NCBI GenBank assembly: GCA_020536535.1
Contig: JAHLWZ010000347.1
Coordinates: 20,600 to 84,599, forward strand
Direction of reading: 5' to 3'
Length of the DNA stretch: 64,000 nt
DNA from: Pelomyxa schiedti
Taxonomy: Eukaryota; Protista; Evosea
Shown here: positions 12,359-44,474 of the stretch, piece after piece
Layout: the number at the start of each line of letters is the position of its first letter
How positions within the stretch are numbered: the first letter of the stretch is position 1
Notes under the pieces: generated by a model
Told to the model about the DNA's origin: nothing
Databases searched by the model: none
What the model saw: only the letters and a program-made list of their open reading frames with translations
Program-made: the position numbers and the translations under genes

Positions 12359-15300
12359 ATGACTTCGATACCACCGCGCCTCATTCGCCCATGTACGTAC
12401 GAAAAATAAATGGGGGTCTTTTGGTGTTGTAAACGGCGTGAACAGACGTGGATTCAATACGGGAGAACGGATGTTTCCGCAGTCGATTGCGCCGTCACAA
12501 AACTGGTGAATCGCTTGCAGTGGTATTCCCAAGAGGTGTTGACCAGAGTTCCATGAAGAAAACGCATGTGGTGCTTTCCATTCAAGAAATGAACAATCTT
12601 TTCAGGTGTGCACTCATTGTATCATTGGTTTTTTTCCTTTAACATTGGGAGTCTTGAGGGAAATTCTTTACAGTTGATGGAGATACTTGGAGTGGCCATG
12701 GTAAGAGTTCACATAAATCTCTTTTAACTTTTAAATGGAAACTGGCAGCAAATACACAGAACACGTCTTGAATTGGAAATCATGGGTCACCCACATTTCC
12801 AAGGAAATGATGATCTTCTCAATAAACCTGGGGAACTGAAACATGTGCATGGATTGGATGATTCACACAATTTGGTGAGTTTTCCTCTCACTTCTTTTCA
12901 ATTCTTTGTGGCCATCCCCAGTCCTGCAGCTGAAATATTTAGTGGAGTTTGTTAACATACAAACACTAGTTGAAGCATCAAAGTGATGAATGGCAGTTGG
13001 CCCTGACTGAGGTGTACAAAAAGCATCCTCGTCTCAATTTCTTGTCACCAATACAACTCACAAGGTTCGGGGCAGTAATGATAACAGAGTCACCTGAAAT
13101 AACTGGTTAACTACAAACAATACGCCTAAAATTCAGTTTCTTGCAGGACCATATTTGTGGGCATGCTTCCCAGAGGTGAATGAAATTCCCCCAGAAGCAG
13201 TACTACAGTGTTTGGACTTAGCACTGAACACTGTAGGGAGAACGCAACCAACATCAGCAGCGGACCCTGCATTTTTGTTCAAGCTTGTTGCCACTTTTGT
13301 AACTCAGGTTGCCAACCTGAAATCAGTCCAAGTGAAAACAGGGTGTGGGGAACAGCATTACCCCTGCATTGTTGACACTTCTCGGCATATCGTTGTTCAA
13401 CTTGCCGAAGGTTTCACTCCCTGCTCTATCATGTATTTGCTTTTTGAAGTGTTTGAATTCCAAAAGCCACACCCATCTAGGGTACTGTTTATAAAGAACA
13501 CAACAAGCAGACAATGCCTAAAACAGTTTCTTCGATGCATCAATAGTTTTCCACACCTCACATTCGCCATTGTGGGTGTGAATGATATGAAAGCGGAACT
13601 CAGGCAGTGTTTGTACAAGTGGTACTCAAAACCGGCAACACAAAACCAAGCACCAGCAAAAACTTTCCTGATTTTCACCTCCCGTGTTGGAATTGGTGCT
13701 TTCTCCAACAGTATCGTCAAGCAGCAGACAGTGGTGTTGGCGGAGGTCAAATCAAGAATCATAACATCACCTCTGAATCCCCAACAGATCATGGAAAGCG
13801 CCAAGGCAACTGTGTCATGTTATACTGGCGGGTCCCGCTCTGGAAAAAGCACTGAGATCAGCGCAAAAATGGAACAGAACAAAAAGAACTTGGAACCACT
13901 GTGCATCAGCATGACTGAGTGCTTCTCTGGGTCTGATGCAATTCCAAAGCTTTCCTCTTTGATGAAAGTGGTAATGAGTTGTGATGAGGCAACGCAGTTT
14001 GTTGCCAACATTCACTTTGACGTGGGTACCTATGCTTACATGGACACAATCTCCACCTTTTTTTACGACATGCTCATGTGGGGTGTTGTGTGTGACAGTG
14101 GGACAGGTGTGATGCTTCCAGTTTCTCGAAGAAATCTCAGGTGGAACTTGTTTGTTGAATTATCACCAGAACCATCCTCTGATGCCTCCAAAGGTTTTGG
14201 CTTTTCAGAGCTCGTTCTTGAGAATCTCCCCATCCTGAACCACCTTGGAGCCATTGTCAAGCAGTGTGAGATCCCATTTGTCGTGGACAGCAGTGCCTTA
14301 CTTGTTGCAAAGTTCTTTCAAGCAAAGGTGAAGAACCTTCTTGACAAACCAGCTGGACTTGTGGCAGAGCTGAACGCAAACCCTCTTTCCTTCAACCCTG
14401 TTCTTGTACTGGAGGATTTCTTTCGTTCTTTCAAACCAGCCACTGTTTCCAGTGTTTCACTCCCTTCAGACAGAATGATGCAGCGCCACTTTGTGTCACT
14501 GTTGGCAGATCGGTGCAAATGGCTTTCAGTTCATGCACGCCAGAGATTGACACTATACAACAATTGTGAGCTGGCCAACAACCTCAGTGGAACAGTGCCC
14601 ATCAGCAAACTCTTCCAGATGTTTGTGGAAGAGAGCCACGTTTTGTGCAACCCCACGTTTGCCTCCGAGAAGCTCATTTACGCTGCTCGTGAAAAACCAC
14701 CTCTTCATAGAAAAGATACTATGGTGGTGATGCAGCTGCCAATTTTCTTTGCTGTCATGGAACATGTTCCCCCACAACTTCCAGTTCCAGAAGAGTTGGT
14801 CTTTACTTTGACCAAGGCCAGGGACTCCAAATTACTTCAACAACAACTGCAACTGGCATTTGGAATGGAGAACATTCAGGAAGTCATTGAGAGGAAAAAG
14901 TACATCCTCACACCAGACTTTGCACTAAAAATACTGGTTGTTTATGATCACATGAATGCAGGACTCAACCTCGTGATTTCTGGGGGAATAGGAACAGGCA
15001 AAACGGAACTTGTTGATGTGTTCGGTGCGCTACTCAACTCCAGAACAAAGTTGACACCCAACTTGCCAATCAAGATGAAGAAGTTTGTGCTCGGAAAGAT
15101 GCTCAGCAGCATACAGGCCATCCCCAGAGCATTGTTGGACCAGTGTCGTGCCATCCTGCAAGGGCAACCACCATCCAAAGTTCCCCAAACACCTTTAAAC
15201 ATTACAGCCCCCAAAAACACTCCCAAGACCTGCTGCCTTGAGTGGTTGGATGACAATGAGTTTTTCCACAAATTTCTCCTTGAAATGCTTGCCACTTACC

Positions 15301-18300
15301 CGCACCTTTTCCCCCAGTTTGCAAGCAGGATTGTTCAATTCTTGAAGAAAAATTTGATGAAACACAGGCACATATCCCTGAATGATACTGGCAACCTGTC
15401 CAGAGTTCTCGATTACACCCTTCTTCAAGTGTGTTGTGTGGAAAATGATATCTTTATTCTCACCAAGACATACAGCCAGAAGAAAACGTTGCAGCAGGGA
15501 GGAAATATGTTGTCAACAACCCAAACGAGCTTGCTGACTTGGTGACGTCGTTCAGAAATGCCAAGTTTGAGAAGGTTTTCCACAAAATTCGCATGCACCA
15601 AGGACTTTGTGCAGATGAATTCAGAGAAAGGATCAACGAGATCAAGGAAACACTCACCAAGTTCCCCAAAGACACAAAGGTTGTTTGCTTCATTGACAAC
15701 TGCACATCAACAATGAACCTGCTTGGAATGGTGAAGGAAGTGATGTGTGACTCAAACCTGGATGGTGAACCACTTCCAAAGAACATCTTCTTCGTGGCTG
15801 CACTCAACAATAACCAGCCCAGTATTCCTCCACTCACAACCAATAATACCAGGTGTCAAGTGGAATTGGCAACTTCATCAGTACAAAATCGGATTGATCT
15901 TGCTGGAACTCCCAGCAAGTTTGGTACCAAGTCCTTTTCAGTGAGACCACCGCCCCTCTCCATGAAGAAGATGACTGTTGACTTTGGCCAACTCACAAAC
16001 CTGCAAGAGAAGACCTTCATTGACGGTTTGATTTCATCTCACATCAAGGATGAGGCAGAAGTAGATGAAACCCACAGGAATCAACTCAAGTCACTTCTGA
16101 TATTTGGGCAGGACTTCAGCAACAATGCCAACATTCACTGGGTCACTGCCGGCATCCGAGACATTGTTCGAGCCATCACTCTTTATATTTATTTTCTCCA
16201 CCACCCACAGTTCATGTTCAACTTGCCGCAAATATTGGCACCAAGTTACAACACCCATGTTCATTGGCAAGCAATGGTTGTATTTTATTTTTTCTCTCTC
16301 CTTCATCATTTTCTATTATTTTGGTTACACAAACAAGGTTATATCAATTGCAATGACATATTACTTCCGACTTCCATCACGAGACTTCTTTGAACAACAG
16401 AGCCCACTCCAAGCACCACAAACCAGAACACCGTGTACAAGGGACCAATTCCAGGATGCCCTTCTGAAATTCCTTAACAACTTCAAAGATGCACCAGAAT
16501 ACTTCAATGTGTGGGATTATTACCTCAATAACGGTGTACTCAACTCCTTGTGTAGCAATACCCACCTTCCACCTGGAATTGCCAAGACCAAGGCACTCAA
16601 GGAAAACCTGTTTTGCACTGTTGTGTGCCTTGACGCAAAGATTCCCCTGGTAATTGTTGGTCCTACGTACGTTTTTTCCTTCTCCCCTTACTCAACGACT
16701 CACTTCATCCAGTGGTTGCTCCAAGACACTGAGTTTCAAGGTTGCCATTGAAAACATGAAGGGGCAGATATCCCCAGAAAAATTCTATCGCACGTTGCAC
16801 CATGTGCATGCATTCCGATACCAATTCAGTGAGCAGTCAACCCTCACAGAAATCATGTATGTTTTCAAATCTGCAATTCTGAGGCAAAAGACTTTCCCCG
16901 GCAATTCCCAAGAGTGTTGTGCTGTTCTTTTTGATGAAGTTGAAGAGAAAACACCTCTGGAGGTGTGAAGAACTTATGAATGCTTTTGGAAATTTACAAT
17001 GACAGATTTTGAATCTCAGCCTTGACCACAGCCCAGTTTCCTGTGTCTTGTTGTCCAGAAAGATTCTTGATGAGGTAACAACCAACCAAGGTTTGATGCT
17101 GTGGCAAGGAGAACCACAACTCGCCGATTTGCAGACTTTGGCTGAAGGTTTGGTGGAGCCTCCTTGCCATAGTAGTTAACATAACAGTACAAACTAACAG
17201 AGTGCATTTTTGGGAATAAGACAAGCAGTATTGCCCCATCGATAAGAGAAATCCTTGGGACACTTTGCAGATCCTACCAGACAGAAGTGACCAAGGCCTA
17301 TGGGCTGCCTTATCCAGAAAGGTTCTTTCACCTCAGAGACTTTGTCTATTTTCTTCGCTATCTTAGGAAGCAACACTCAGTACATGGCCTTCACATTTCC
17401 CCAGACGTGGTTCTTTCTGGTTTACGACGAAACTTTGGGGGACTTATTCAGAGTCACTTTGACAATCTCGTTATGAACTTCTTTGGCAATGCAAATGGAG
17501 CACTGACGAAATATGGCCTGCCACTGTGGGTGTCACCTGCAACTGACCAACATAGAACAGAGATTACCACCATCAGGGAGAACCTTGCAGAGAGGCTCAC
17601 TGATGCTGCTGACCCAAACTCTTCTCCATTCAGATATCTCATGCTGGTGTGCTGTATTTGGAAAAACAACAACCAATAAATCTCACCTAATACTCCACAG
17701 CTGGATCCATCCGAAAATGCAGTTGCCGTGTCTTTACTTTTTGACTTAGGATTGTGTGATCACAGCCAAACGAGTGTGTGCTCTCTTGGTGGATTCAGTG
17801 AGGATGGTGACCAGAAATTGAAAGCGGCAGTGGTGGAAAAATTCAAGGCGGCAATGGAAAAAGGAGATACGATTGTGCTGGTGAACTCCACCAGTGTTCA
17901 CTGTTCGTTGTACGATGTTTTCAACCGCTATTATACAATCATTCCAACTAGCACCAGCACGAGGCTTTGTTTCACCAATCTTGCTGCTGGGTCATTCCCA
18001 CAGGCATGCTTTGTCCATGACAACTTCCGTGTCATCCTTCATGTGCCCAAGTCCTCCCTCCAAACAATTCCTACCGCCCTGCTCAGTAGATTTGAGAAAT
18101 ACTGCCTTGGAATTGATGATGCACTCTTTGAGCGACTTCAGACCATCTCACTTCCCAAACTCATCACCCCCATGAGTGCCCTTCCTTTGCATCCATACGA
18201 AGTCTTGCGTGATGGGGCACTGCACATGATCAATGAACTGCACACCACTCAGTCCAACAATCGACTGTTTTATGGTGTGACTCCAAAAGAAACGGCGAGT

Positions 18301-21300
18301 TCCCTTGTTCTCACTGTGTTGGACCAAACACTTGAAATGAGCAAACTGAGGGCTCCAAAGGAAGACCCCAATTCCCTTGTGCCTCTTTTCCCACCCCTGC
18401 TTGGCACCCAACCCGAAACACTTCCGCTTTTTAGTGCACGAGATCATTGGGAGCAGAACATGCGGGAATTCATTATCCAAGGCAACCTTCACCTTCTTCA
18501 GCTTGCCAAACCAGAGTCAATTTACTTTTGCAAGCATCTCCCAGAGAGGTACAAACACAGTTACCTTTTGGAGCAGGAACACTTCTCGTTTTACCGCTTC
18601 CTTGGCCTCCTGTGTAAAGCACATTTTTCCTTTGTATCTCGTACCTTGGGTGACACTGAAAATCAAAGAGGAGGCGAGAAGGAACAAAGAGCAACAACAG
18701 TGGTTGTTCCTCAGAGAGGGGAGTATTCATCCAAGTGGTGTGTGTTCACACGAACCAGTGCTGAAATCATCACTCTTCCAACAGACAAAAAACTCCAAAG
18801 GAAGATGTTTGATGTGCTTGTTCAAACTGGTTCAGTTCCGAAAGGGTCAGAAGAGAGCCCTGAGGATTGGATGGAAGTGTTGAGCCTTGGTGAGATGTCA
18901 TCAAGTCAACAATGTTCCTCCCGTGTCCATGATTTTTGTTGTTCTCCAAAGAAAATTCTCTTGTTGTGTGTTGCTGATCTATCAGTTGCAACCACAAGTC
19001 AAATCAACTTCCTGAGGAATGAGATCAATGAGAGGTGGAAAGTAATGGAAGAACAACAATGTGAGCATCATGAAGCACGAAATGAGGGGCAACATCTCCA
19101 CCGTGTTGCTGTTCTCCTGCTGCACTTCTCAGCAGAGATTGGAATGAGAGCTGAGAGTTCTTACCATGCAATCTTCCTCAACGGTTGGGACTTCCTTTTT
19201 GTGGATGCTTTGGGTGTTGTGGCTGGTTCGTCTGGAGCAAATCCTCGCACGGAAGTAAACCCACGCCCGTGGCTTGCGAGAGCGTTTGGGTTGAATCTGA
19301 GGGACAGTGAGTCTGACAGCATGAAGCGGGACTTGTCAACCCAAGAAATGGACACATTCAGAGGTTTATTCTTCGAACTCCTTCGGCAGTTTTGCAAATT
19401 CATGACTGGAAGTGGGATCAACACAACGACCTCAACACTTGACCATTACCAAGCAAAGGTCTTTTATGGGAAACCGGGCAATGTGGATGCAATTGGTTCC
19501 CCACAAAACCTCAACATCTGCATTGCAGACAAAAGTGAGGAAAGGTTCCAGATCCTGAAACAGCTTTTTGAAGAGAACCCAGTTCTTTACGAGGGGATTC
19601 TCGAACAGTTCAGCCGTTCCTGGAATTCCAGATTCCTCAATGAACTCGTGTGTGAAGCAAGCACGGAGTTGTTTCGTGGGTCTTGTGTGGTGAGCTTTGT
19701 GACCGCAATTTCTTCTTCTCTTCAGAATTTCATGGCTCCATTGGTGAGCACGATGCTCCAGATGATGCTTTCCTCATTCGGACTCGATTCTGTGTTGAAC
19801 ATGTTTGAAAATCGCCATAAAGGGAAATTGTTCACGTTGATACACAGTGTTTGCTACACCATTCCAATCCCTCCACTTGGCAAACCAGTGCTCACCAATT
19901 CCAAGCAGCTGATGAGTTGCACACCCACTGTCACTGTCTTGAGGACACATCCATTTCCACCTGAACTCCCTTTTTATGATTCAATTGCACACCTTGTCAA
20001 CACCCAGGTCATTCGTGCAGCCAGAGAGATGTGCCACGAAAAGCCCTCCCCCCAAACTTTGCATGGGAAAGTGCTCGAGTCAATCAAGTCAAATAAGCTC
20101 CTTGACGAGCTACTCGAGAGCATCTGGTTGAACCCACCTTTGTTCACCATGTTCAAACGGGACTTTGTGACCAGGTCACTGAAGCTCTCCACCCTCCATA
20201 TCTCAGAGTTCAAGAACCTTTTGGGTTCCAATGCCCAGGCTGTTGATTTAGAGGGCAGGCTGGGCCGGTTCAGGGAAATGATTCTCAGTTGTATCCGGGC
20301 ATTCGAGATTTCCCTTTTGGAAGACATCCCTGAACTGTTTGTGATCAAGAGGTTCTATGAACCAGAAATCAATTATTTCATGGCACTTGTCACTCCTTTG
20401 CAGCTTCTTGATCCCGCCCTCACACCAGAGCAGTTTGACAGGTGCAGAAGGCCTCCAAGATTTGGGAAAAACCAACTTCAGGAGATGGTGAAGTGGGTTA
20501 CAACGCTCACAGCAGACCTGCTGTGGGAGAGGTTGACACAGGAAATCCTCACAGGAGGGCCAAAGCTTGATTCCCATGCCACTGTGAATTGGGGCCAAGT
20601 TTACCGCCACTTCTTCAGCACTTTGAAGTCGAGGTCCGAATTGGCCACCCTTCTCTCGAACTGTCCCGAAACAATTCAGAAGCTTGATGCGATGCACGTT
20701 GTGTTTGTGTTCCTCTCCAATTGCCGGGCACAGAGTTTACAGCCCACTTTCCCTTTCCTCACTCCGAATCCTGCCTTGTCTCGAATATTGGAGCAGTTTG
20801 TGTCAACTTCATACACCCCAAGCACGCGGTTGAAATCTGGACTGCTCCTTGCTCTCAACCTTCTTCCTCCTGATCCCTCCAAGTCCTCTGACGAAGACAT
20901 CCAATCAATTTGCAGCATTGTTGAATACATGCTTCAGGAATCAGACAAGTCAATGCTTTTTGATGACTCCAAGTCAAATTTCTTTTTTTTCCTCCAAGTT
21001 CGTTTCCACCTGCATTTCGATATTATTTTGTTTTCGTTTGACTGAGTGTCTTCTGATGTGATTCTCAGATTTGCAACGACTCACTTGATGACTTTGTCAA
21101 CAATCCTGTTTTGAGGGGCTATTGCAAAAAACTCATTGGGAACATTGGCTGGGTTGCCAACTTTATTTTTTCATGGCTTGAACCAAAACCGAATTCTTGT
21201 ATTTCTGAAATACTTCAGCTCACATCTGATGTATGGACTGCTTTAAATGTCAAATTGGCTAACCTCTTCCCTCTTTTTTTATGTGCACCACTTGTCCGTT

Positions 21301-24300
21301 GCTTTCACCAACATTCTGAACAGTTAATAACCGAAACAAAACCTTCCTTTTCTGCAGAAACTTACCACTACTCACCGGATCTTCTCTCCCCCACCCAAAT
21401 TCCAACAGCACATTTGCCTCTTGAGTTTCTCTTATATCACATTCTGTTGAAATTCATGCAACCATCAAAGGAGGATAAATTCCCTCAAGTATTGGCAATC
21501 AACACCCTGGAGGATGCTTGGAACATACTTATAACAGTTCCAAGAGGTCCAAGAGGTACCCACAAATCACAGAACCCCTGTTTCACTCACTCTCATTTAT
21601 CAGAAGGAGAACATGTTTTAAATCAAGTGAAGAAAGCTGCCAGCAGGACCATTCTTCTTGCACTCCTTGCTTCCACTCTGAGTGGGCAGACTGGGCTTTC
21701 TGCACGACTACACAAAATTAAGCCAGAGATTGTGCAAGTTGTTTCACAGGTATTTTTTGTTTTGTTTTGCTTTGTTTTAAGTTTCTTCCATATTCAGCTT
21801 CTCTCACGTGGCTCGAAAATTGTTGTAAATGCCAGAGGATTCTTCCTTGGTCAGATCTCAGAAGAAACTTTCACATCACTTCTCCAAGACCATGACGCTT
21901 TGGGCCTTTTAGGTCTTGAAGACATGTAATCTTCTTCTAGTTCCTTCGTTCCCTCTATGTTTAATGTAATCCTGTTCAGGAACAGTAAACCTGGAGCTCA
22001 AAACGCCACAGCAAGGCGGACTGAAGCTATGACAGTTCTTCCTTCGTGCATTCTAGGTGGTGGTGAATTCTATGACCTCATCCAGACCCAGAGCAAAAAA
22101 CTTTCATCCACAGGACTTCTTGCCACGTTCTTGCAACAGGCCCCTGTGTTGAGAGTCTTCTCACACCTGCCCACTTTGGTTCATTTTTACCATATGTTGA
22201 ATTTTGTGTTTGCACCACTGATGAAAGGTTTTTTCCTCTAATTCCTTCTTCTTGATATCATGATCCCACTCAGTTTGTTTACAGAAAATAGAATTGTTGG
22301 CTCTTTTTCTGAGTGCGTTGAATGGGTTGGTTTCAACTCCCCAGCAAACAAGGCGTCCATTTGTTCAGCTTACCTGAAATTTCTGGATGCTTGGAAGGCC
22401 ATTCTGACGGGATTCAATGATGTAAAACTCAAGTATAACTCGGTGCTTATTCTTCCTCCACTCAGTGCACCTCCCCTTTTTCCAGCATAAAAATAACGGA
22501 GATTGGACCCAACACCCCATTTTTTGAGTTGGTGAGTTGGAAAGATGAGAGACAAGGGGACCTTCTTTTCACTGTCATCAGAACAATGACTGAAATTCAG
22601 AATTCACTGATTCGACTCAGGAATGAGTGTGACACAGGTGAGGAATGTCTCGTTCTTCGTTATCGTCTAAGAATGCCCTCAGACGAAATCAACCCTTTTG
22701 GATTCATTTTTGAACAATCATCTCACTCAAGCTCTTATAATGTTGATGCCATTCCGAACTCAACTTCTCTTCGTTCGTTTTCTTTTTCCCTTTTCAATTA
22801 AGAATTCCCAACATTTGGCTATGAGGCTAACACTTGACACCACAGAAATTTTAGTCACTGGAGGTCCTGTGGAGGATATTGAAAGAAGTCTTGTGACCCA
22901 TTGCCAGATCCCAGCCAATGGGAAAAGATGTGACTTGCATTTTGATGCCAACAGACTTCAGAGACATGTAAGCAAGTTTCCTTCTTCAGTGTCTGATTGA
23001 CGAAACGCCACAAACAGGTGATTGAGCGCTATTTGGCAGGGAAAGCCATGTTGACTGATGTGGAGAGCATGAGAACAGTGTTTCCTCTTGACATCCTTGA
23101 CATCACAGCTGACCAAGTTTCCACTCACCCCAACAAAACTTGTTGTGATCACTTTGCTTTTTTTAGCAGCCCGAACCCGAGCGGAGTGAAGGCCAGGATC
23201 AACTCGATTTTTCTCTTCAACAGCAGTTAAATAGGTTGCCAACCGTGTCCTCTCAACCCAGTGGCTGTCTTTCTCCTTTGCATTTTTGGCCTTGATTTTT
23301 TTTTTGTTATTGTGGTGGTGCATTTTGTGTTTATTAACGTTATACTAGATTGCACCCAGACTACCAGCAACCGAATCACAGTAATTACTATGCTCAGTTT
23401 GAAAGAGCTCTCAAAGGTTGTTTTCACATGACACTTTCCTTTGTCAAATTAATTTTAATCCAGGAGAGACTGAGGAGCACATCAGAGAATTGATGCAGCT
23501 CCTGACACAGCTTCTTGAAAATCTGCAGCGTGCTTTACGTCAACAACCCTCTGAAAATCAGCCGGACTCCTATCTTGGATCAGTGTGGATGCACCTGTTA
23601 CCTTCCAAGGTGATGCCAAATGCCCTTACACCCCTGAGGAACCAGCGTTTTTGGTGCATTGGTGTTGTTGTAATCAACGTTTTGACCAAATACCGAGCAA
23701 AGCAGTGGTTGTTTGCTGGAATGCCAGACAAGTATGACATGGCTCCCCCTGAATCTGTTCAGACCAATTTCTCAAGGAAAGTGGAAGAGGTATGGGTGCA
23801 CCCTGAAAAAAACTCACTGTCGGATTCTCCTCACAACTTCTCCCTCAAAAAAAAGATACTGAAAGGAACAATTGAGGTAAAACAGCGCATGCGTGCAGTG
23901 GCAAATGCCATTGTTGGATTTTTGAAGCTTGAGAAACTGGGTTCAAACCAGGAATGTGCACTAAAAACTCTTTTTGGTGATTACTCGGCAGTTGTATGGC
24001 TCCTCGTTTTATTTTCCTGCCCAGATTTTGTTGGGCTCAAGCATGCAACAACATCCCACAGGTGACAGAAACTGTTTTGCGAGAGGACATAGAATCCTTG
24101 ATTGGAAACTTGAGAGTCGGAAATTATTGTTATTTAATGCGGCAACTTCATACTCTATCCAGTGCTCTGCTTGTTGCCATTGCCAATGTCAGTTGTTCAT
24201 TATCTCTTTTTTTTTACGATTTATTTGCTTAAAATGTCTCCAACAGCACGCTTCAACAGTCCCAGCCAATGAAGTATCATTCAACATCCGTTTCTGTTCA

Positions 24301-27300
24301 CTCATTAACATAGTATCACGAACCTGTCGAGAACTTGCAGGTGTCTGTGCTTCCACCACCAAAACCAGTCGAAGAAGAAGAGAAAACTCTTCCTTTCGAA
24401 ATTTCTTGGCACAGTATCGAGCTCCCTGGTAATTCTTTTTTTTTGCCTATGAAAGATTAAAACCCCATACAGAACCAGACTTGCAAACTTCTGTTCCAGA
24501 TGGTACTCCGATTTGTACCGGGCCGCCTCGGCCCAATCCGCTTCCGTCAGACAAATACGATGTTATCTCACATTTTCCAATACCACCGAGTACTCTCAAC
24601 ATGTCTACTACCTTCAAAGCTATTCCAGGAAAGAAATTTTGTATACACCCTTGTGATATTTCTTCTTTCTCTCCTATGAGTGGGAATAAAGACAACACAG
24701 AACCTGACTTGCAAGCCTCTGCATTAGAGTGTGGGCTGAATTTATCTGGATCACATGAGCCCACACCAAGTCAGAACCCTGCAAATCCCTCTTTTGAACA
24801 TAAAATTGTTCCCCCCCTGCTTTCTCCGCATCTCTCTCTAAAAACACTTTCCCAAGCTATGCTTAAGGCAGTGGAAGACATATCAGTGCAGGTCAAAGAG
24901 GAAGACAATGACTTCCATATGTATCTGGAAAACATGAGAAGCAACTACCAAACCATGACTCAGACAGTTGCAACTACACAACAGAAAGCAACAAGGATTT
25001 CGAGTTTTGTGGAGCACTACAGCTTGTTTATGGAAAAGATGAAGAAACCAAAAAAAGTTATGGAAATAACTGAACTCCAGCTGCAGGTGGTCAGTGATGA
25101 AACTTTATTGGCCATGCAGAGGCAGAGAATGGGGCTTCTACTTCAGGAAGTCTCACATCACTGCCTGGAGATGGTAGTCTATGACCCACTAGAAGTGGCC
25201 TCCATTTTGACAAAAGTGGAACAATATACCTTGGAAGCAAACGAGATCCTGGGGTCAGTCCGGGAGATCACATCAAACATGCAATCTGCAGCCATGGAGA
25301 CAGATACCCAAAGAACCATGCTTGAAGGAGATCTACAACTCATTGTACATGAAATCGATCAGCTATTGCCACAAGAGGGAAATGAAGCCCTAAGATTCCC
25401 TGACTGGCGACAGGTTCCCCAGAAACAGGACCCACTCAGTACCACAACCTACGGTACCACACACGACTTCCCTCCAACAAGTTCCAGCACTATCCAGCAG
25501 CGGTTGGAGGAGGAAAAGCAAAGGGCTCTGAAGCAGCAAGCAATTGCACTTGAAGCTGGCAAGAAAAAAGAACTTGAAGAACAGGCCATCATACTCAACG
25601 CAGAAAAGCAAAGAGCACTCGAACAGCAGGAATCTGCCCTCAATATAAAAAGTGCAAAAATACACAATGAGAAAAAACTTGCGCAACAAGCATATACCCT
25701 GGCTGTGGCAAACAACCTGGAAATTAACCTTTGTGGATTCCAGAAAGGAGTTATGGCTCTTGTAGAACTGAACGACCTAAGTCTAACTAATGCCGTCTGT
25801 ATTGCTAATGGGTCATTTGGGGCAGTGTGTAAAGTTCCTGTACTCCCACAACAGTGGGGGAGTGTTACTGGTGTACAATGCGGTGTGACTGCACCCTTAG
25901 CAGAGGTTGCATTGAAGATGATGTTCAATTTCACTGCCGGAATTAGAACCCTGCAACAGAGGACACAGTTTGAAAGGGAGTATGAAGTCTTAGTCAGGTA
26001 CCCACATTGGTGCTTCACAAATGTGTTCAACCACTTCCGCGGTGATACCTCCTTATCCCTGGTCAAGGAGAGCTTGAGAGGCAATTATGCAATCGTGGAT
26101 GAAAAACGCAATTGGGTGTCAGGGTGCAGTGACACCAGGACCGCCATTCCGGTGTTTCAGCGAACCACGTTCATGACCATGGAGCTTGCAAAATTCACTC
26201 TGGAATCCCTCATTAACTGTCTCCAGGAACCACATCAGGAACAGCAGCGTAGTTCTCCAAAGGGAACCCCAGAACCAACCAACCCATGTTACATGGTACC
26301 TCCACTCAGCAAAGTGGCAGATATTCTTCAGTTGGCGTTTTGCGTGCTGTGTGCGGTTGACCACCTCAACACGCGAGGGTGGTTCCACTGCGACATCAAA
26401 TCTGACAACATCCTGCTGATGGAGAGGCCACACATCAAAGGAAACATCTGGGCTCTCTGTGACCTCGGAACCGCTGTGTTCTGCCAAGATGGGAATCCTC
26501 TAGTTTTGCCCAAGGGCGAGACGTTCACTGGAAATGGACCAAACAGGTCACCTGAAGTGATCCAGGCGCACATCACAGGCAAGTTTCCTCTGCTCAAAAA
26601 CGATGTGTGGGCCGTCGGCTGTGTTCTCTACGAGGCCATTTCCAGGACTCACCCCTTCTTTCAGCAAAATGACCTCAACACCAACAAGATATGTGACACC
26701 AACCTCCCTCCCCTCGTCCCTGATCGTTCTTCTCTCGCACCCGACGCCGCCCACCCCAACGGTACTGCAAACAACTCAACGGTGTCGGGGCTTGTTGGAT
26801 GGCTCCTGGAGCGGGAGGCCGCACGCCGGCCCACGGCCCGCGAGGCCCTCCTCGCCTGCGGTGCACTCGTGTCGCTCCCCCAGCCCCTCATCGCCCAATT
26901 CCTCGCCCATCTCCACACCAGCAACCAACCTCAGCAGGACTCATCCCGGACTGCACAACGCAATGCAGCAACAATCCCACCCCCACAGAATTTCCCGGCA
27001 CCACCATCAAACCTGGTCCCACCACCATTGGGACCGAGCCCACAGCAGCACCAGCACACACCACCACCACAACAAACAACAACAGCAGTACCTGAGGAAC
27101 TCATCAGGTGCATGAGCAAGGCAGTTCACAAGGCACACAAGCACACCGTGACTGAAATCTTCCAACGCAACGGGCTGCGCTTTGGTGTTGATGTTGTTCC
27201 CATACAATCATCAGCATCAGCAGCAACAGCATCTTCTGGGAGCCCCAACACCATGCAAGCAACCGTGAGTGAAGTGATGAGGCTTGTTTATTGCAACATG

Positions 27301-30300
27301 GCACTGCGTGACGTGCCTGATGCCGCTCGTTCTCTGTTCTCTTTCCTCAGTGCTGTCTCATCTCCCCGTTACAACCTCAATCTGCAACTATCCTGATTTT
27401 TGTCGAACCAGGAAAAAAAAATTGAGTCTTTTTCGACAATACTTCAACACAATTCTTTTTGAAAACAATGCTTGGTGCTGGGAGTGAACTGAACCAACTA
27501 TTCTTGGTGTTTGGGCATGTACCTTCCTGATTCCATCAGAAAGATCGGCACTGTAAATCAATCCCAGGGCTTATGCAAGGCTATGTCAAGCTCGACCACA
27601 CAAATCTTGCATCACCTCTGAAGAAAAGAGTTAAAACCTGTGATCTCGCACTCTTTTAGGCATTCAGCAATTTTGACCTCCTGCTGAGGAGGGCTCACTC
27701 CCAGGCCTTCAAGTGAACAAACTTGGTTTTTACCTCAGGACCGGTTTCTACTTTTTGTTTTCGTAAATCAAAAAACTGGTGAGGAGTTGCACCGGCGTAG
27801 CTCGGTGGAGAATGACTTCGGTACCACCGCACTTCATTCGGCCACGTGCGTGCGAAAAATAAAAGAGGTCTTTCTTACATAAATGACGTGTGTCGACAGA
27901 CGTGGACTCAATATGGGAGAACGGATGTTTCCGCAGTCGCTTGCGCTGTCACAAAAATGGTGAATCGCTTGCAGTGGTTCCCCCAAGAAGTGTTGACCAG
28001 AAAACGCAACCTGTTGGGCTTTCCATTCAAGAAATGAACAATGTTTTCAGGTGTGCACTCATTGTCTCATTGTTTCTTTCTTTTGACAGAAAAAGTCTTG
28101 AGGGAAATTCACTGAAGTTGGTGGAGATACTTGGAGTGGCCATGGTAAGAGTTCACGGAAATCTCTTTTAGCTTTTAAAATGAAAACTGGCAGCAAATAC
28201 ACAGAACACGTCTTGAATTGGAAATCATGGGTCACCCACATTTCCAAGGAAATGATGATCTTCTCAATAAACCTGGAGAGTTGATGAACATTGAGATTTT
28301 ACAAGCTTTGCACACTTTGGTTGACTCCTCCTTTACTGCAAGAACCTGACCACAAATTCAAAATAACCAGTTGAAGCAACAACTTGCGGAGTGGAAGGAA
28401 CTCATGGTTGAAGTGTACAACAGGCAGCCTCGTCTCAACTTCCTCTCTGAAAGACAACTCACAAGATTTGGGGCTGCACTCACAACAGTGGCAGCTGAAT
28501 ATGCCTCTACCCCACAATCAGCCACCCACAAGGTTCAGACTCTCACAGGGCCATACCTCTGGGCATGTTTCCCTGATGTGGAAGCCATTCCCCCCGAAAC
28601 GGTGTTGCAGTGCCTGACGTCGGCAATCGTTGAAATTGGAGGGAGGCCTGAGCCAGTGCCAGTGGTCGAGGGTGCTGCAACAGTTGTGGTTCCCCAAGGT
28701 GCGGCTGTCTGCTGGAACCCAGTTTCATTGGTGAGGCTCGTGCTCTGCTTTGTCACTCAGGTTGCCAATTTGAAGGCGGTTCAAGTTAAAGCGGCAGGAG
28801 GTACAAGCGCCACAACATCGGACAACTCGCAAGACATCGTTGTCCAGCTTGCGGAAGGGTTCACTCCCAACGCACTGATGCATCTGCTTTTCGAAAACTT
28901 TTCATTCCAAAAACCACATCCATCAACGATCCTGCATTGCAAGAATGCGAACAAGTCAGACCTCGAACGGTTTCTTCGATGCATCAGCGGTTTTCCACAC
29001 CTCACATTCGCCATTGTGGGTGTGAATGAGATGACGGATGAGCTCAGGCAGGAACTACTGTACAAGTGGTCCTCCAAAATGGCCACCCAAGACAGACCAA
29101 AAGCAAAAACTTTCCTGATCTTCACCTCCCGTGTTGGAATTGGTGCTTTCTCCAACAGTATCGTCAAGCAGCAGACAGTGGTGTTGGAGGAGGTCAAAGT
29201 GAGAATCGCAACATCACCTCTGAATCCCCAACAGATCATGGAGAACGCGAAGGCAAGCGTGGTGTGTTATTCTGGTGGTCCTGGCACTGGAAAAAGCACG
29301 GAGATCAGGGCAAAAATGGAACAGAGCAAGAAGAACTTGGAACCACTGTGCATCAGCATGACTGAGTGCTTTTCCATATCTGACGCGATTCCAAAATTGT
29401 CCCCTCTGTTGAAAGTAGCGAGTGGCGCTGAGGCAACTCCCTTCGTCGCCAACGTTCACTTTGACGTCAGTGCTTATGCTGACATGAGTGTTGTTTCAAC
29501 CTTTTTTTACAACATGCTCATGTGGAGTGTTGTGTGGGATGCTGAGACAGGTGAGATGGTTCCCATTTATCGGGAAAATCTCAAATGGAACTTGTTTGTT
29601 GAGCTGGCAGCTGCACCACCTTCTGATGCTTTGGAAGGTTTTGGATTTGAGAGTACCGAGCTTGTGTTACAGAACATCCCCATCCTGAAACATGTTGGAT
29701 CCTTTGTAAAGCAGTGTGGGATCCCATTTGTCGTGGATAACAATACTTTACTTGTTTCGAAGTTCTTGCAAGCAAATAAGAAGAGCCTTCTTGATAACCC
29801 CACAGGGCTTGTGGCAGAACTCGATGCCAATCCTCTCTCCTTTGATCTTGTGGCAGTGCTTGAGGATTTCTTCCATTCCAGCAGCAGTCCTCCTGCGGGC
29901 TTCAATCTTTTATCACTGTCCACAGATCGAATGCTTCAGCAACGCTTTGTGTCTCTGCTTGCAGATCGGTGCAAATGGCTTTCAGTTCATGCACGCCAGA
30001 GATTGACACTTTTCAATAGTTGTGAGCTGGCCAACAACCTCAGTGGAACAGTGCCCATCAGCAAACTCTTCCAGATGTTTGTGGAAGAGAGCCACGTTTT
30101 GTGCAACCCACCTCTTGGCTCTGAGCAGTTCATTTACACTGCTCGTGAAAAACCACCTCCTCATAGAAAAGATTCAGTGGTGGTGATGCAGCTGCCAATT
30201 GTCATACCAGTCATGGAACATGTTCCCCCACAACTTCCAGTTCCAGGAGAGTTTGTCCTCCCTTTAGCAGGGGCCGTTGAAGACCCAAGGTTACTCCGAC

Positions 30301-33300
30301 AACAACTGCAACTGACATTTGGAATGGAGAACATTCAGGAAGTCATTGAGAGGAAAAAGTACATCCTCACACCAGATTTTGCACTGAAGATGTTGCTTGT
30401 TTATGACCACATGAACGCCGGAACCAACCTCGTCATTTCTGGAGGCACTGGAACAGGCAAAACGGAACTTCTTGATGTCTTTGGCACCCTCCTCAACTCA
30501 AGAACGAAGTTGACACCCAACTTGGTGTCCAAGACAAATAAGTTTGTGCTCGGAAAGATGCTCAGCAGCATCCCAGCCATCCCCAAGCCTTTGTTGATCC
30601 AGTGTCGTGCCATCCTCCAGGGGCAACCACAATCCAAAGTTCCCCAAACACCTTTGAAAATTGTGACCCCCAAAAACGCACTTTCAAACACCTGCTGCCT
30701 CGAGTGGTTGGATGACAATGAGTTTTTCCGCCAGTTTCTTCTTGGAATGCTTAACGCCCACATCAACCTTTTCCCCCAGTTCGCAAGCAGGATTGTTCAA
30801 TTCTTGAAGAACAATTTGATGAAACGCAGGTACATATCCCTGAATGATACTGGCAACCTGTCCAGAGTTTTGGATGACACTCTTTGTCAAGTGTGTTGTG
30901 TGGAAAATAATATCTTTATTCTCACCAGGACATACAGCCAGAAGAAAACCCAAAAGCGGAAAATCGTGTTGTCCACTACATAGAAGAGCTTGCTGACCTT
31001 GTAATGTCGTTCAGAAAAGCCAAATTTGAGAAGGTTTTCCACAAGATTCGCATGCACAAAGGACTTTCTACAGCTGAATTCAGAGAAAGGATCAACGAGA
31101 TAAAGGAAACACTCACAAAATTCCCTAAAGACACCAAGGTTGTTTGCTTCATTGATAAGTGCACATCCACAACAAGCCTGCTTGGAATTGTGAAGGAAGT
31201 GCTGTGTGATTCAAGGTTGGATGGAGAGCCACTTCCCAAGAACCTCTTCTTTGTGGCAACACTCAGCAATAACCAGCCCAGTATTCCTCCACCCGCGGTC
31301 AATAACACCAGGTGTCAGGTGGAACTGGTAGCTTCAGTTCAAAACCAGATTGACTTTGTTGGAATTGCCAGCAAGTTTGGGACCAAGTCCTTTGCAGTGA
31401 GACCACCGCCCCTCTCCATGGAGAAGATGACTGTAAACTTCGGCAAGCTCACAAAACAGCAAGCAGAGAGTTTCACATGGGTCTTGATACTATCTCACTT
31501 GAAGGATAACCCTCATTTTGATAGAAACTGTGCAAAACAGTTGACGTCACTTGTCTTGTTTGGTCAAGACTTTATCAATAGTGCCAAAATCCACCGTGTT
31601 ACTGCCAGCATCCGAGACATTGCTCGAGCCGTGGATCTTTACCTTTATTTTCTCCAACATAAACAGTTCATGTTCAACTTGCCCCATCCTTCTGCTTCAA
31701 ACTACAGTACTCACGTTCATTGGCAAGCAATGGTTGTCCCCTCTAACTTTATTTTTTCTCCCTCTTTCTGTTGTTTGACACTCACAAAAGGCGATCTCGA
31801 TTGCAATGACATACTACTTTCGACTCCCATCAAAGGATTTCATGGAGCAGCAGAAAAGAGAGTCCTTTCGAGCATCCCGAACCATAACACCTTGTACAAG
31901 GGACGAGTTTCAGGATTCCCTTCTGAAGTTCATCATCAGCAACTTCAACAATGCCCCGGAATATCTCATCATGTGGGATGATTACTTCAACAAGGGTGTC
32001 CTGAACTCCTTGTGCAACAACACGCACCTCCCACCTGGAATTGCCAAGACTGTTGCTTTCATGGAGAACTTGTTCTGCACTGTTGTTTGCCTCGATGCCA
32101 AGATTCCACTACTGATTGTTGGTCCACCGTATGTTTCTTCACAGTTCCTCAACTTTCTGTCTAACTTTACCCAGTGGTTGCTCCAAGACACTCATTTTCA
32201 AGGTTGCTGTTGACAACATGAAGGGACAGACATCCCCAAAAGGGTTCTATCGGGCTTTGCACCATGTGCATGCATTCCAATACCAATGTAGTGAGCAGTC
32301 CACGTTCATAGAAATCAAGTCTGTTTTCAAATATGCAATTCATAGGCAAAAAACTTTGCCTGTCGATTCCCAAGAACTGTGTGCCGTTCTTTTTGACGAA
32401 GTGAGATTGCCCAATGAAGAAAAATATCCATTGGAGGTGTGGAACTCTTTGTGGTTATCAACCAACTTTCAACAGATTTCAAACATCCACCTTGATCACA
32501 AAATTTCTTGTCTTCTTCTGTCAAGAAGCATTCTTGACGAGGCTATTACCAATCGAACATTGATGCTGTTGGAAAGTGAACCACCACTCACTGATTTGCA
32601 GACTTTGGCTGAAGGTTTGGGAAATAGTTTCAACTCTTTGTAACCCAGAAATTGCCAGGGTGTATATTTGGGAGTGATACAAGTATTGCTTGGGGAACAA
32701 GAGAAGTCCTTGGAGCACTTTGCACAGCATATCAGGCAGAAGTGAGCAAGATTTATGGGTCACCTTACCCAGCAAGGTTCTTCCACCTCAGAGACTTCGT
32801 CTATTTCCTCCGTTTCCTTGGAAAACACTGTTCAGGAAACAGAGCAGGGGATGCTTTCCACATTTCCCACGATGTAGTTCTTTCTGGATTGCGTCGAAAC
32901 TTCGGTGGATTGGTTCAGAGTGACTTTGACAAACTTGTTGCGAACTTTTTCGACAACATCAACTGGGCACTGAAAAAACATGCACAACCATTATGGACAG
33001 CCCCTGCAGCTGACCAACGAAGAACAGAGATTTCCTCCATCAAGGAGAGCCTGGCAGAGAGACTCACTGATGCCGATGACCCAAACACTGCCCCGTTCAG
33101 ATACATCATGCTGGTGTGTGGTCCTACTTGTTTAAAATTAGAGGCATCCCCTAATCATTTCAACAGCTCGATCCAACCGACAATGAAGTTGCAGTCTCTT
33201 TGCTCTTTGACTTGGGACTGTGTGACCACAACCAAACGAGCGTGTGCTGTATTGGGGATTTTCGTGATGACAGTGACCTTAGAGCGAAAGCAGCAGTGGT

Positions 33301-42700: not shown

Positions 42701-42719
42701 TTGTTTGTGTGATGTGTAA
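27812..42719 (+). CDS. Giant RNF213/mysterin-like AAA+ protein fused to a C-terminal PINK1-like kinase, copy B
   Basis: Collinear paralog of copy A with matching intron positions: GGPGTGKST, GGTGTGKTEL, GP|PGCSKT, AVLFDEV, ITNR, LLSRFEK. The same IELPE|PDLQT junction (~39870-39910) leads into kinase ORF 39918-42719 (NGSFG, VALKMMFN, HCDIKSDN, DLG, SPE, KNDVWAVG). Confidence 0.87.
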
Positions 42720-44270: not shown

Positions 44271-44474
44271 GCAGCTTGAACCCTTTTTTCCTCACTGAGT
44301 TCCTACAAAAAAAAAACGGAAAGCTGTTTAAGTTTCTTTTGTTTCTACAGAAGTTAAAATGGGAATACAAGCAAAACCAGGGAAACTAAGCAAACTAATT
44401 CTAGTGAGGCGAACAGTTTTAGGGTTTGGGCAAGTATCTTCATGATTAGATCTATAAGGTATGAGTCGTTAGGA

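What the first reader, a model, noticed from the sequence alone, without database searches (positions are those of the whole stretch)
12359..27396. RNF213-like AAA+ motor spliced to a PINK1-like kinase: candidate undescribed ubiquitin/phospho sensing machine
Seen in sequence: one collinear multi-exon frame runs from RNF213-type AAA motifs through an RNF213 CTD-like region. A canonical 44-nt intron (24429-24472, IELPE|PDLQTS) then joins it to a coiled-coil linker and an intact kinase, and the same junction is conserved in copy B. Established: animal RNF213 is a dynein-like AAA+ E3 that ubiquitylates LPS of cytosolic bacteria, and PINK1 is the ubiquitin/Parkin kinase of mitophagy. Inference: this fusion may replace the E3 output of RNF213 with a kinase output, as a cell-autonomous sensor for intracellular prokaryotes or organelles. 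That would be notable if the host is Pelomyxa, which carries prokaryotic endosymbionts and has reduced mitochondrion-related organelles. I do not recall this architecture being described.
Basis: partly seen in the sequence, partly recalled or inferred. Interest (0 to 1): 0.92.

Follow-up and report, generated by a model that had tools for sequence, protein, structure and literature searches.

The report
RNF213-like ATPase fused to PINK1-like kinase
An anaerobic amoeba (Pelomyxa schiedti) carries two tandem copies of a giant gene that joins a relative of the animal immune ubiquitin ligase RNF213, stripped of its ligase zinc fingers, to a relative of the Parkinson's-disease kinase PINK1, an architecture not found described in the papers searched.

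Summary
From ATG 12359 to the stop at 27396, 29 exons joined by 28 short GT-AG introns give a stop-free 4,430-codon frame; the five 5' introns are provisional. Copy B (to 42719) has the same 23 core introns and is also stop-free.

The AAA part belongs to the RNF213 family: a family profile hits only RNF213 in the PDB (E 2.5e-96, AAA4-AAA6). The next ~840 residues, folded on a 78%-identical paralog, resemble only the RNF213 E3 module. RING and RZ fingers are absent.

The kinase belongs to the PINK1 family. A profile gives E 3.5e-40 for PINK1 against 1.9e-23 for the next family, and the fold match includes PINK1's N-helix and C-terminal extension. Its catalytic loop is HCD, and it has no mitochondrial targeting part.

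The 44-nt intron 24429-24472 is real in sequence. The domain after it is native to the RNF213-like gene, because a kinase-less paralog (P0155) has it too. It runs without a stop into the kinase cassette inside one exon.

The same cassette ends at least 15 Pelomyxa proteins with LRR, Sel1, ARM or actin N-termini. No transcript evidence was available, and the public annotation of copy B splits the gene. Function is inferred. The architecture is a new variant built from known families.

The parts
12359..27396 (+). Copy A of the fusion gene: 29 exons, 28 introns of 31-126 nt, 4,430 codons. The first five introns (12393-13146) are provisional.
   Evidence: Spliced model stop-free; introns conserved in copy B.
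13827..13850 (+). First P-loop, GGSRSGKS (aa 376); by spacing probably the AAA2 equivalent.
   Evidence: Motif search on the model; invariant G..GKS in alignment A5. The AAA2 assignment is inferred.
14982..15005 (+). Walker A GGIGTGKT (aa 761), equivalent to the RNF213 AAA3 Walker A.
   Evidence: Profile A5 hits the RNF213 AAA3 P-loop region, E 0.002; the best nine of 13 matches at E up to 0.1 are RNF213.
16338..19200 (+). Region homologous to RNF213 AAA4-AAA6. It includes Walker A GPTGCSKT, split by intron 16667-16712, and Walker B-like VLFDE. The end coordinate is approximate.
   Evidence: Family profile A2 against the PDB: only RNF213 hits, E 2.5e-96, human residues 2714-3460; single-exon phmmer hit E 4.4e-7; junction peptides.
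19900..23100 (+). E3-module-like helical scaffold without RING or RZ finger (approximate limits, mapped from paralog P0155 residues 1151-1991).
   Evidence: AF2 model of P0155:1131-2330, pLDDT 62.5. Foldseek finds only RNF213 entries at E 2.7e-6 to 5.4e-5, next hit 8e-3. VIA gives Z 11.9 with 504 residues aligned to human RNF213 3701-4979, next Z 6.0. No zinc-finger Pfam hits and no Cys/His clusters. The RZ position is deleted.
22683..23116 (+). Short stretch with weak, collinear similarity to the RNF213 C-terminal domain (NVDAIP...FDANRLQRHVIERYLAGK); spans two introns.
   Evidence: Profile A4: top PDB hit is the RNF213 CTD, but E is only 0.3.
24429..24472 (+). 44-nt GT-AG intron joining IELPE to PDLQTS; in-frame TAA if retained.
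   Evidence: paralog protein P0155 aligns across the junction.
24473..25450 (+). Helical tail domain native to the RNF213-like gene. It is shared with copy B and with the kinase-less paralog P0155. Copy A carries an extra 243-nt in-frame insertion.
   Evidence: Three-way alignment; tblastn E 2.5e-35; Ka/Ks between A and B 0.40.
25483..25740 (+). Start of the kinase cassette: a long coiled-coil helix whose end aligns with the PINK1 N-terminal helix.
   Evidence: Kinase paralogs begin to match at 25471-25513; model helix 2-84; VIA ranges start at model residue 60-70, equal to PINK1 115-131.
25780..26880 (+). PINK1-family kinase domain: VALKMMFN (Lys at 25915), HCD catalytic loop (26386), DLG (26455), SPE; N-lobe insertions at the Ins1 and Ins3 positions.
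   Evidence: Pfam Pkinase 3e-21; profile A6 against the PDB gives PINK1 E 3.5e-40 versus IRE1 1.9e-23; alignment.
26881..27393 (+). C-terminal extension: four helices with a disordered P/Q-rich loop, aligned with the PINK1 CTE.
   Evidence: AF2 helices 467-481, 538-562, 595-609 and 611-625; VIA alignment runs to model residue 628-637, equal to PINK1 566-581.
27812..42719 (+). Copy B of the fusion gene. The spliced frame is stop-free from 28350 (4,342 codons); its 5' exons are unresolved. The junction intron is 39866-39909.
   Evidence: The public annotation splits it into 2595-, 280- and 889-aa models.
44442..48712 (+). Neighbouring gene with the same kinase cassette on an unrelated N-terminal module (P0006, 1125 aa). 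It represents the subfamily from which the A/B cassette derives.
   Evidence: tree with a 100/100 clade of A, B, P0004, P0005 and P0006.

Best explanation
What it is: one gene, tandemly duplicated, in Pelomyxa schiedti. It encodes a protein of about 4,400 residues built from four parts.

1. An RNF213-family AAA+ core. It begins near AAA1/AAA2, with no N-arm, and has Walker A sites at the AAA3 and AAA4 positions.
2. The RNF213 E3-module scaffold, without the RING and without the catalytic RZ finger.
3. A helical tail that is native to this amoebozoan RNF213-like lineage.
4. A PINK1-family kinase cassette: N-helix/coiled coil, kinase with PINK1-type N-lobe insertions, and a C-terminal helical extension. 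It has a non-RD (HCD) catalytic loop and no mitochondrial import signal.

Shown: the architecture, the family assignments, the intact frames, and purifying selection on the last exon.

Inferred origin: a cassette of the P0004-P0006 kinase subfamily, one member of which lies 5 kb downstream, replaced the Q/P-rich end of a P0155-type RNF213-like gene. The fusion was then duplicated.

Inferred mechanism: the ATP-driven RNF213-like body docks or oligomerises on a target surface, as RNF213 does on bacteria and lipid droplets. It cannot ubiquitylate by the known RNF213 route. Instead it brings the kinase to phosphorylate proteins there. Ubiquitin is the candidate substrate because of the PINK1 kinship.

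It is one member of a lineage-specific set of 'targeting module + PINK1-like kinase' proteins, plausibly used for surveillance or management of intracellular prokaryotes or organelles.

My odds: single fused gene about 0.8; RNF213 family 0.95; PINK1 family 0.9; ubiquitin as substrate about 0.25.
For: Frame and introns.

RNF213 kinship:
- E 2.5e-96, and only RNF213 is hit.
- AAA3 P-loop.
- a single exon alone gives E 4.4e-7.
- E3-module fold, Foldseek E 2.7e-6, VIA Z 11.9 against 6.0 for the next hit.
- a distant family member, P0169, carries an RZ finger.

Loss of fingers.

PINK1 kinship:
- 141 bits against 86 bits for the next family.
- the top 22 Foldseek hits are all PINK1.
- Z 28 with about 360 residues aligned, including the N-helix and CTE, against about 280 residues for other kinases.

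Fusion:
- Paralog P0155 aligns across the intron junction and through the tail.
- P0155 ends without a kinase and is followed by a peptidase gene.
- The kinase paralogs start to match at 25471-25513, inside the same 971-codon exon.
- Ka/Ks is 0.40 in the tail and 0.25 in the kinase.
- The fusion is present in two copies that share only 77% amino-acid identity, which argues against an assembly chimera.

Cassette spread. Origin of the cassette.
Against: No RNA evidence could be reached.

The public annotation (Augustus + PASA + EVM with transcriptome, PMC8887013) splits copy B into three models, with the kinase as a separate 889-aa protein starting at an internal Met at 40050. However, that annotation also ends the AAA model by reading into an intron, so it is clearly fragmented here.

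The E3-module fold evidence rests on a 78%-identical paralog and a model of only moderate confidence (pLDDT 62.5). An unrestricted VIA search did not list RNF213.

The CTD similarity is not significant (E 0.3).

The residue at PINK1's autophosphorylation position (Lys+9) is Ile in A and Met in B, not Ser, and the loop is HCD rather than HRD. PINK1-like regulation and substrate choice may therefore not carry over.

Copy A's tail is more diverged than B's and carries an 81-residue insertion.
Confidence: 0.65

Rival explanations
1. There are two transcription units. The RNF213-like gene ends with its helical tail or in the retained intron, and the kinase is made from its own internal promoter and internal ATG. 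The continuous open frame would then be a by-product of a recent insertion.
For: The public annotation of copy B calls an independent 889-aa kinase protein, P0003, starting at 40050. The intron carries a conserved in-frame TAA in all three paralogs, so a retained-intron isoform without the kinase is possible. All other members of the kinase family are far shorter proteins.
Against: There is no stop codon anywhere between the native tail and the kinase, in either copy, over more than 930 codons. P0003's start lies inside the tail domain that the kinase-less paralog P0155 uses as part of the AAA protein. The tail upstream of that Met shows Ka/Ks 0.37. The same annotation breaks the AAA gene at an unrecognised intron. 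Two guesses at an equivalent separate kinase model in copy A are not on record.
Confidence: 0.15
2. The fusion is real, but the kinase is only historically PINK1-like. It belongs to a Pelomyxa-specific family of non-RD receptor-type kinases that phosphorylate other substrates, not ubiquitin. The RNF213-like part is then just one more targeting module.
For: The same cassette sits behind LRR_6, Sel1, ARM and actin modules. The catalytic loop is HCD in the whole clade, and the PINK1 Ser228-equivalent position is not Ser. There is no mitochondrial targeting part. From my own knowledge (Dardick and Ronald 2006), non-RD kinases are typical of pattern-recognition receptor signalling.
Against: The PINK1-specific features go beyond the catalytic core: the ALKMMFNY strand, the GN..N.SPE segment, insertions at the Ins1 and Ins3 positions, the N-helix and the CTE. 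In a related organism, an RNF213-like protein is fused instead to a ubiquitin-specific protease. That keeps ubiquitin as a plausible common theme.
Confidence: 0.45
3. The copies are decaying duplicates or an assembly chimera of a single-cell, amplified genome, with no functional fusion protein.
For: The assembly comes from single-cell amplified DNA (PMC8887013). Copy A's tail is diverged and has an insertion. A kinase fragment lies on the minus strand near 59 kb, showing that cassette debris exists at this locus.
Against: Both copies keep stop-free spliced frames of more than 4,290 codons. Non-multiple-of-3 indels fall at or beside the predicted introns. Ka/Ks on the last exon is 0.25-0.44. 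The same junction occurs in two copies diverged to 77% identity, which a chimeric join would not produce.
Confidence: 0.04

Closest known systems
Animal RNF213 (mysterin), the giant dynein-like AAA+ E3 ubiquitin ligase (PDB 6TAX, 7OIK, 8S24, 9JW1)
   Same: The AAA core is homologous, with Walker A sites at the AAA3 and AAA4 positions. It is followed by a helical region whose predicted fold matches only the RNF213 E3 module. The domain order is the same.
   Different: There is no N-arm or linker: about 760 residues precede the AAA3 P-loop, against about 2,390 in mouse by my recollection of the structure paper. There is no RING and no RZ finger, so the known transthiolation site is missing. The CTD is only faintly recognisable. 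It has an extra helical tail and a C-terminal protein kinase. It is found in an amoebozoan, not an animal.
PINK1 (insect and human; PDB 7MP8, 8UYH, 6EQI, 9EIH)
   Same: PINK1 is the best sequence and fold match by a wide margin. Shared features are the ALKMMFNY beta-3 strand, the KSDNIL catalytic-loop context, the GN..N.SPE segment, N-lobe insertions at the Ins1 and Ins3 positions, an N-terminal helix and a four-helix C-terminal extension.
   Different: The catalytic loop is HCD, not HRD. The Ser228/Ser205-equivalent position is Ile or Met. There is no mitochondrial presequence, transmembrane segment or PARL site. The domain sits at the C-terminus of a 4,400-residue protein and has at least 15 paralogs in the genome.
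P0155 (Pelomyxa schiedti 'AAA+ ATPase', 2734 aa, contig JAHLWZ010000197.1) and related amoebozoan proteins (P0154; Physarum polycephalum transcript P0153)
   Same: P0155 is 78% identical over the large exon and has the same introns, including the 44/47-nt one. It has the same tail domain and the same lack of an RZ finger.
   Different: P0155 ends in a Q/P-rich low-complexity tail and has no kinase; the next gene is a peptidase M3.
RNF213-like protein with a C-terminal USP deubiquitinase and SAM domain in L001 (GCA_049309645.1)
   Same: It has the same RNF213-like chassis. An enzymatic domain is attached after the CTD-like part, in the same open reading frame.
   Different: The added enzyme is a ubiquitin hydrolase rather than a kinase. 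The organism was not identified and the gene structure was not checked in detail.

Membership tests
RNF213 family | Dynein-like AAA+ core homologous to RNF213 AAA units, with Walker A at AAA3 and AAA4 | tested here: met
   Profile A2 against the PDB: only RNF213 hits, E 2.5e-96 over about 750 residues of AAA4-AAA6. The AAA3 P-loop region gives E 0.002. P-loops lie at aa 761 and 1288 of the model.
RNF213 family | E3-module scaffold (E3 shell and core) after the AAA ring | tested here: met
   Tested on paralog P0155 (78% identical): Foldseek E 2.7e-6 with RNF213 entries only; VIA Z 11.9 with 504 residues aligned to human 3701-4979, next Z 6.0. Confidence is moderate because the model pLDDT is 62.5 and the sequence profile found nothing.
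RNF213 family | RING finger | tested here: not met
   No Pfam zinc-finger hit in the window exons or in P0155. No Cys/His-rich stretch in the spliced model.
RNF213 family | RZ finger with the catalytic cysteine | tested here: not met
   A canonical RZ finger (PF20173, 2.5e-21) is present in distant member P0169. At the aligned position, P0153, P0154, P0159 and P0163 keep a lone Cys (GCP or VC), and P0155 and the window have a deletion.
RNF213 family | C-terminal domain (CTD) | tested here: inconclusive
   Profile A4: the top PDB hit is the RNF213 CTD, collinear, but E is 0.3. The VIA alignment extends to human residue 4979.
RNF213 family | Long N-terminal arm and linker | tested here: not met
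   Only about 375 residues precede the first P-loop and 760 precede the AAA3-type P-loop. The 5' exons are provisional.
RNF213 family | E3 ubiquitin or LPS ligase activity | not testable with these tools
   Needs biochemistry. Absence of the RZ finger predicts no activity by the known route.
PINK1 family | Kinase domain closer to PINK1 than to any other solved kinase | tested here: met
   Profile A6: the 12 best PDB sequences are all PINK1, E 3.5e-40 to 6e-29; the next is IRE1 at 1.9e-23. The single sequence also ranks PINK1 first.
PINK1 family | N-terminal helix and C-terminal helical extension packed on the kinase | tested here: met
   AF2 model pLDDT 82. VIA Z 26-28 with 350-375 residues aligned, spanning model residues 60/70-628 and PINK1 115/131-574, against about 280 residues for other kinases. 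The top 22 Foldseek hits are PINK1.
PINK1 family | N-lobe insertions (Ins1, Ins3) | tested here: inconclusive
   Insertions lie between beta2 and beta3 (model 121-140, disordered) and between beta4 and beta5 (189-226, hairpins). These match where I recall Ins1 and Ins3 to lie. No residue-level comparison was made.
PINK1 family | HRD catalytic loop and Ser228-type autophosphorylation site | tested here: not met
   The loop is HCD in A, B and most paralogs. The Lys+9 position is Ile in A and Met in B. A Thr two residues later is common across the paralogs.
PINK1 family | Mitochondrial presequence, transmembrane segment, import-dependent turnover | tested here: not met
   The cassette starts at residue ~3800 of the fusion protein. 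In paralogs it follows LRR, Sel1, ARM or actin modules.
PINK1 family | Phosphorylation of ubiquitin or Parkin Ser65 | not testable with these tools
   Needs a kinase assay.

The most novel reading that the evidence does not exclude
The RNF213-type AAA+ body may be an ancient, pre-animal platform for cell-autonomous defence or symbiont control, with an exchangeable ubiquitin-directed output: an RZ-finger ligase in animals and some protists, a USP deubiquitinase in the L001 organism, and a PINK1-type ubiquitin kinase in Pelomyxa. On this reading the Pelomyxa fusion would write phospho-ubiquitin marks on intracellular prokaryotes or organelles. PINK1 itself would be one domesticated member of an older family of cytosolic surveillance kinases.
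Probability: 0.12. Interest if true: 0.92.

Novelty: new variant of a known kind. Interest (0 to 1): 0.7.

Why it matters
RNF213 and PINK1 are both studied almost entirely in animals. RNF213 is the Moyamoya-disease and antibacterial ubiquitin ligase. PINK1 is the Parkinson's-disease mitophagy kinase.

This locus shows three things:
- Clear RNF213 relatives exist in Amoebozoa.
- PINK1-family kinases have expanded in an anaerobic amoeba whose mitochondria are reduced to hydrogenosome-like organelles.
- Evolution has joined the two families in one polypeptide, with the ligase site absent from this lineage.

It offers a natural experiment on two questions. What does the RNF213 AAA/E3 scaffold do apart from ligation? 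What can a PINK1-type kinase do outside mitochondrial import? It also points to a family of candidate surveillance kinases in a host packed with prokaryotic endosymbionts. In the library searched I found no paper that mentions RNF213 together with Amoebozoa, or that describes PINK1 in Pelomyxa. That library is incomplete.

Tried and rejected
- Single-exon Pfam and PDB searches gave little for the AAA part. Family profiles were needed.
- Two generic gene-model dynamic programmes (composition-based and length-maximising) gave inconsistent introns and were dropped. I replaced them with A/B-conserved introns plus guidance from paralog P0155.
- The third homologous-protein search, on the tail region, returned nothing because of the candidate cap and was wasted.
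- The profile of the E3-module region found no PDB sequence.
- The unrestricted VIA search with the 1,200-residue model gave only generic helical matches.
- Long multi-kinase proteins P0083 and P0049 were checked as possible further fusions and are unrelated.
- Four attempts to fetch the public annotation of copy A by guessing neighbouring or internal protein models failed.
- Cluster names of more distant kinase hits gave no named PINK1.
- Literature searches for PINK1 or RNF213 in amoebae or protists found nothing relevant beyond a statement that Entamoeba lacks PINK1.
- Rejected as explanations: a pseudogene, an assembly chimera, and chance ORF continuity.

Full report
**Where the window comes from.** The window is part of Pelomyxa schiedti contig JAHLWZ010000347.1 (GCA_020536535.1). 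Proteins found with the kinase exon carry P. schiedti names. One of them, P0003, is encoded at window 40050-42716 with 100% identity.

**The locus.** A unit of about 15.45 kb is present twice in tandem. Copy A runs from about 12.35 to 27.4 kb and copy B from about 27.8 to 42.7 kb, at 81-99% nucleotide identity in 300-nt blocks. A third gene at 44.4-48.7 kb carries the same kinase on a different N-terminal module.

**The frame.**
The split codon G|AA gives IELPE|PDLQTS.
- I derived the other introns from three sources: A/B-conserved GT-AG pairs, the positions of non-multiple-of-3 indels in the A/B alignment, and junction peptides scored against a spliced paralog protein, P0155.
- With 23 introns between 15438 and 24472, copy A reads without a stop for 4,298 codons from 13098 to 27393.
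- All 23 introns have partners at the aligned positions in copy B: 22 GT-AG and one GC-AG. Their lengths differ by non-multiples of three in 13 cases.
- Copy B's spliced frame is also stop-free, 4,342 codons, at 77% amino-acid identity to A.
- From the ATG at 12359, five further GT-AG introns keep copy A open. That gives 29 exons and 4,430 codons.
- These 5' exons are provisional, because the mapped sites do not keep copy B open.
- Intron sizes are 31-126 nt. They fit the intron-rich, 98% GT-AG genome described in PMC8887013.

**The RNF213 side.**
- One exon alone hits RNF213 at E 4.4e-7.
- A search with that exon found two homologs, P0001 and P0002. A second search with P0001 found a family that includes P. 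schiedti 'AAA+ ATPase' proteins P0154 and P0155, a Physarum transcript (P0153) and metagenomic proteins.
- A profile of 13 members hits nothing in the PDB except RNF213. The score is E 2.5e-96 over about 750 residues, corresponding to AAA4-AAA6 of human RNF213.
- A profile of the upstream exon hits the RNF213 AAA3 Walker A region at E 0.002.
- The model has P-loops at residues 376, 761 (AAA3-type) and 1288 (AAA4-type, GPTGCSKT, split by intron 16667-16712).
- Downstream of the AAA core, sequence profiles fail or give only a non-significant top hit to the RNF213 CTD, E 0.3.
- I therefore folded residues 1131-2330 of P0155, the 78%-identical paralog, with 15 aligned sequences (pLDDT 62.5).
- Foldseek returned nine RNF213 entries at E 2.7e-6 to 5.4e-5, and nothing else better than 8e-3.
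- The VIA second look aligned 504 residues to the human RNF213 E3 module and the start of the CTD (residues 3701-4979) at Z 11.9, with the next match at Z 6.0.
- An unrestricted VIA search was uninformative.
- I take the E3-module scaffold as present with moderate confidence, and the CTD as unproven.
- No RING or RZ finger is detectable.
- The RZ finger does exist in a distant family member, P0169 (PF20173, 2.5e-21). At the aligned position several members keep only a lone Cys (GCP or VC), and P0155 and the window have a deletion.

**The kinase side.**
- The last exon has a Pkinase hit (3e-21), and its best PDB matches are PINK1.
- An exhaustive search found 16 relatives at E below 1e-30, mostly P. 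schiedti proteins.
- A profile of 24 of the relatives found (alignment A6) gives the twelve best PDB sequences as PINK1, at E 3.5e-40 to 6e-29. The next family, IRE1, scores 1.9e-23.
- The alignment shows ALKMMFNY, identical to Tribolium PINK1, and HCDIKSDNIL against PINK1's HRDLKSDNIL. It also shows GN..NRSPE and KNDVWAVGC, and LLER...RP.
- The AF2 model (pLDDT 82, pTM 0.81) has a long N-terminal helix. It has insertions between beta2/beta3 and between beta4/beta5, and four C-terminal helices.
- Foldseek's top 22 hits are PINK1.
- VIA gives PINK1 Z 26-28 with 350-375 residues aligned, from the N-helix to the end of the C-terminal extension. Other kinases align over about 280 residues at Z about 25.
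- This is a PINK1-family kinase in sequence and fold. It differs in three ways: it is non-RD (HCD), it lacks Ser at the Lys+9 autophosphorylation position, and it has no mitochondrial targeting part.

**Is it one gene?**
- Paralog P0155 lies on another contig and has no kinase; the next gene there is a peptidase M3.
- P0155 aligns across the intron junction. Residues 2206-2295 match window 24062-24427, and residues 2296 onward match from 24472.
- Its genomic intron is at the same place, 47 nt long, with the same in-frame TAA.
- After the junction, A, B and P0155 share a helical domain of about 320 residues, starting at the first residue of the exon (PDLQTS...GPPRP.PLP...AMEMDT...). P0155 then runs into a Q/P-rich end. 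A and B run into EEEKQ.ALKQQ..., the coiled coil that opens the kinase cassette.
- All other kinase paralogs begin to match at window 25471-25513. The breakpoint therefore lies inside one 971-codon exon with no stop, in both copies.
- Ka/Ks between A and B is 0.40 in the tail and 0.25 in the kinase.
- Against this, the public annotation splits copy B into 2595-, 280- and 889-aa models. That annotation ends the AAA model by reading into intron 36479-36536, and it starts the kinase model inside the shared tail domain.
- I could not reach RNA data.
- I put the single-gene reading at about 0.8.

**Context that changes the interpretation.**
- The cassette is not special to this fusion. In P. schiedti it ends proteins with LRR_6 repeats (P0027), Sel1 repeats (P0017), an actin domain (P0011) and ARM repeats (P0021), among others. 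Earlier first-stage notes of this scan list similar cases.
- A tree places the A/B cassettes (100/100) inside a 100/100 clade with P0004, P0005 and P0006. P0006 is the gene 5 kb downstream.
- The likely history is local capture of a neighbour-type cassette by a P0155-type gene, then tandem duplication.
- In an unidentified organism (L001, GCA_049309645.1), an RNF213-like homolog continues in one ORF from its CTD-like part into a USP (UCH) domain, followed by SAM. So this chassis has acquired a ubiquitin-related enzyme at its C-terminus at least once elsewhere.

**Mechanism.** The architecture, the family assignments, the intact frames and the purifying selection on the last exon are shown. The rest is inferred.
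- The AAA/E3-like body acts as an ATP-dependent docking or oligomerising scaffold, as known for RNF213 on bacteria and lipid droplets (established knowledge).
- Lacking the RZ site, it does not ligate ubiquitin by the known route.
- It positions a constitutively competent non-RD kinase at its target.
- Ubiquitin is a candidate substrate by analogy with PINK1. I rate that at about 0.25.
- The family as a whole looks like 'recognition module + kinase' surveillance proteins. That would suit a cell that houses bacterial and archaeal endosymbionts (PMC10579272).

**Verdict.** The architecture is a new variant built from two known families. It is surprising to specialists on either family, but it lacks transcript and functional evidence.

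Noticed in passing
window 44442-48712 (+): Third PINK1-like kinase gene (P0006, 1125 aa). Its N-terminal module, with no Pfam match, is shared with P0004, P0005 and P0007. Its cassette belongs to the clade from which the A/B cassettes derive.
   Followed up: partly
window ~58858-59224 (-): An isolated piece of the same kinase (catalytic-loop region, up to 84% identity to paralogs) on the minus strand. It could be a pseudogene fragment or an exon of another family member.
   Followed up: no
L001:330-10133 (GCA_049309645.1, JBJQOG010000554.1): An RNF213-like homolog (P0001 plus following ORFs) whose CTD-like part runs in the same ORF (6999-8528) into a UCH/USP deubiquitinase domain, followed by a SAM domain (9150-10133). 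It is a second, different enzymatic fusion on this chassis. The organism was not identified.
   Followed up: partly
L004:1165-19441 (P. schiedti contig JAHLWZ010000197.1): The kinase-less paralog is annotated as two adjacent genes (2346 aa and 2734 aa, P0155). By comparison with the window copies they are probably one gene.
   Followed up: partly
window 49300-54400 (-): Long minus-strand ORFs (661 and 1033 aa) made of degenerate 18/24-nt periodic repeats with strong AT skew. This is probably a low-complexity repeat protein.
   Followed up: no
window 24601-24843: Copy A has a 243-nt in-frame, stop-free insertion in the tail domain that is absent from copy B and from P0155. Copy B's tail is closer to P0155 than to copy A.
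   Followed up: partly
window 27060-27359 vs 42368-42667: The 3' ends of the two copies are 99% identical and the synonymous divergence (Ks) there is 0.13, against about 0.5 elsewhere in the exon. This suggests recent gene conversion at the C-terminal extension.
   Followed up: partly
window 42972-44270 (+): A cyclin gene (Cyclin_N and Cyclin_C) lies between copy B and the third kinase gene.
   Followed up: no
P0169 residues 2005-2051; P0153, P0154, P0159, P0163 at the aligned position: In this protist RNF213-like family the RZ finger appears in stages of decay: canonical in P0169, a lone Cys (GCP or VC) in four members, and deleted in P0155 and the window.
   Followed up: partly
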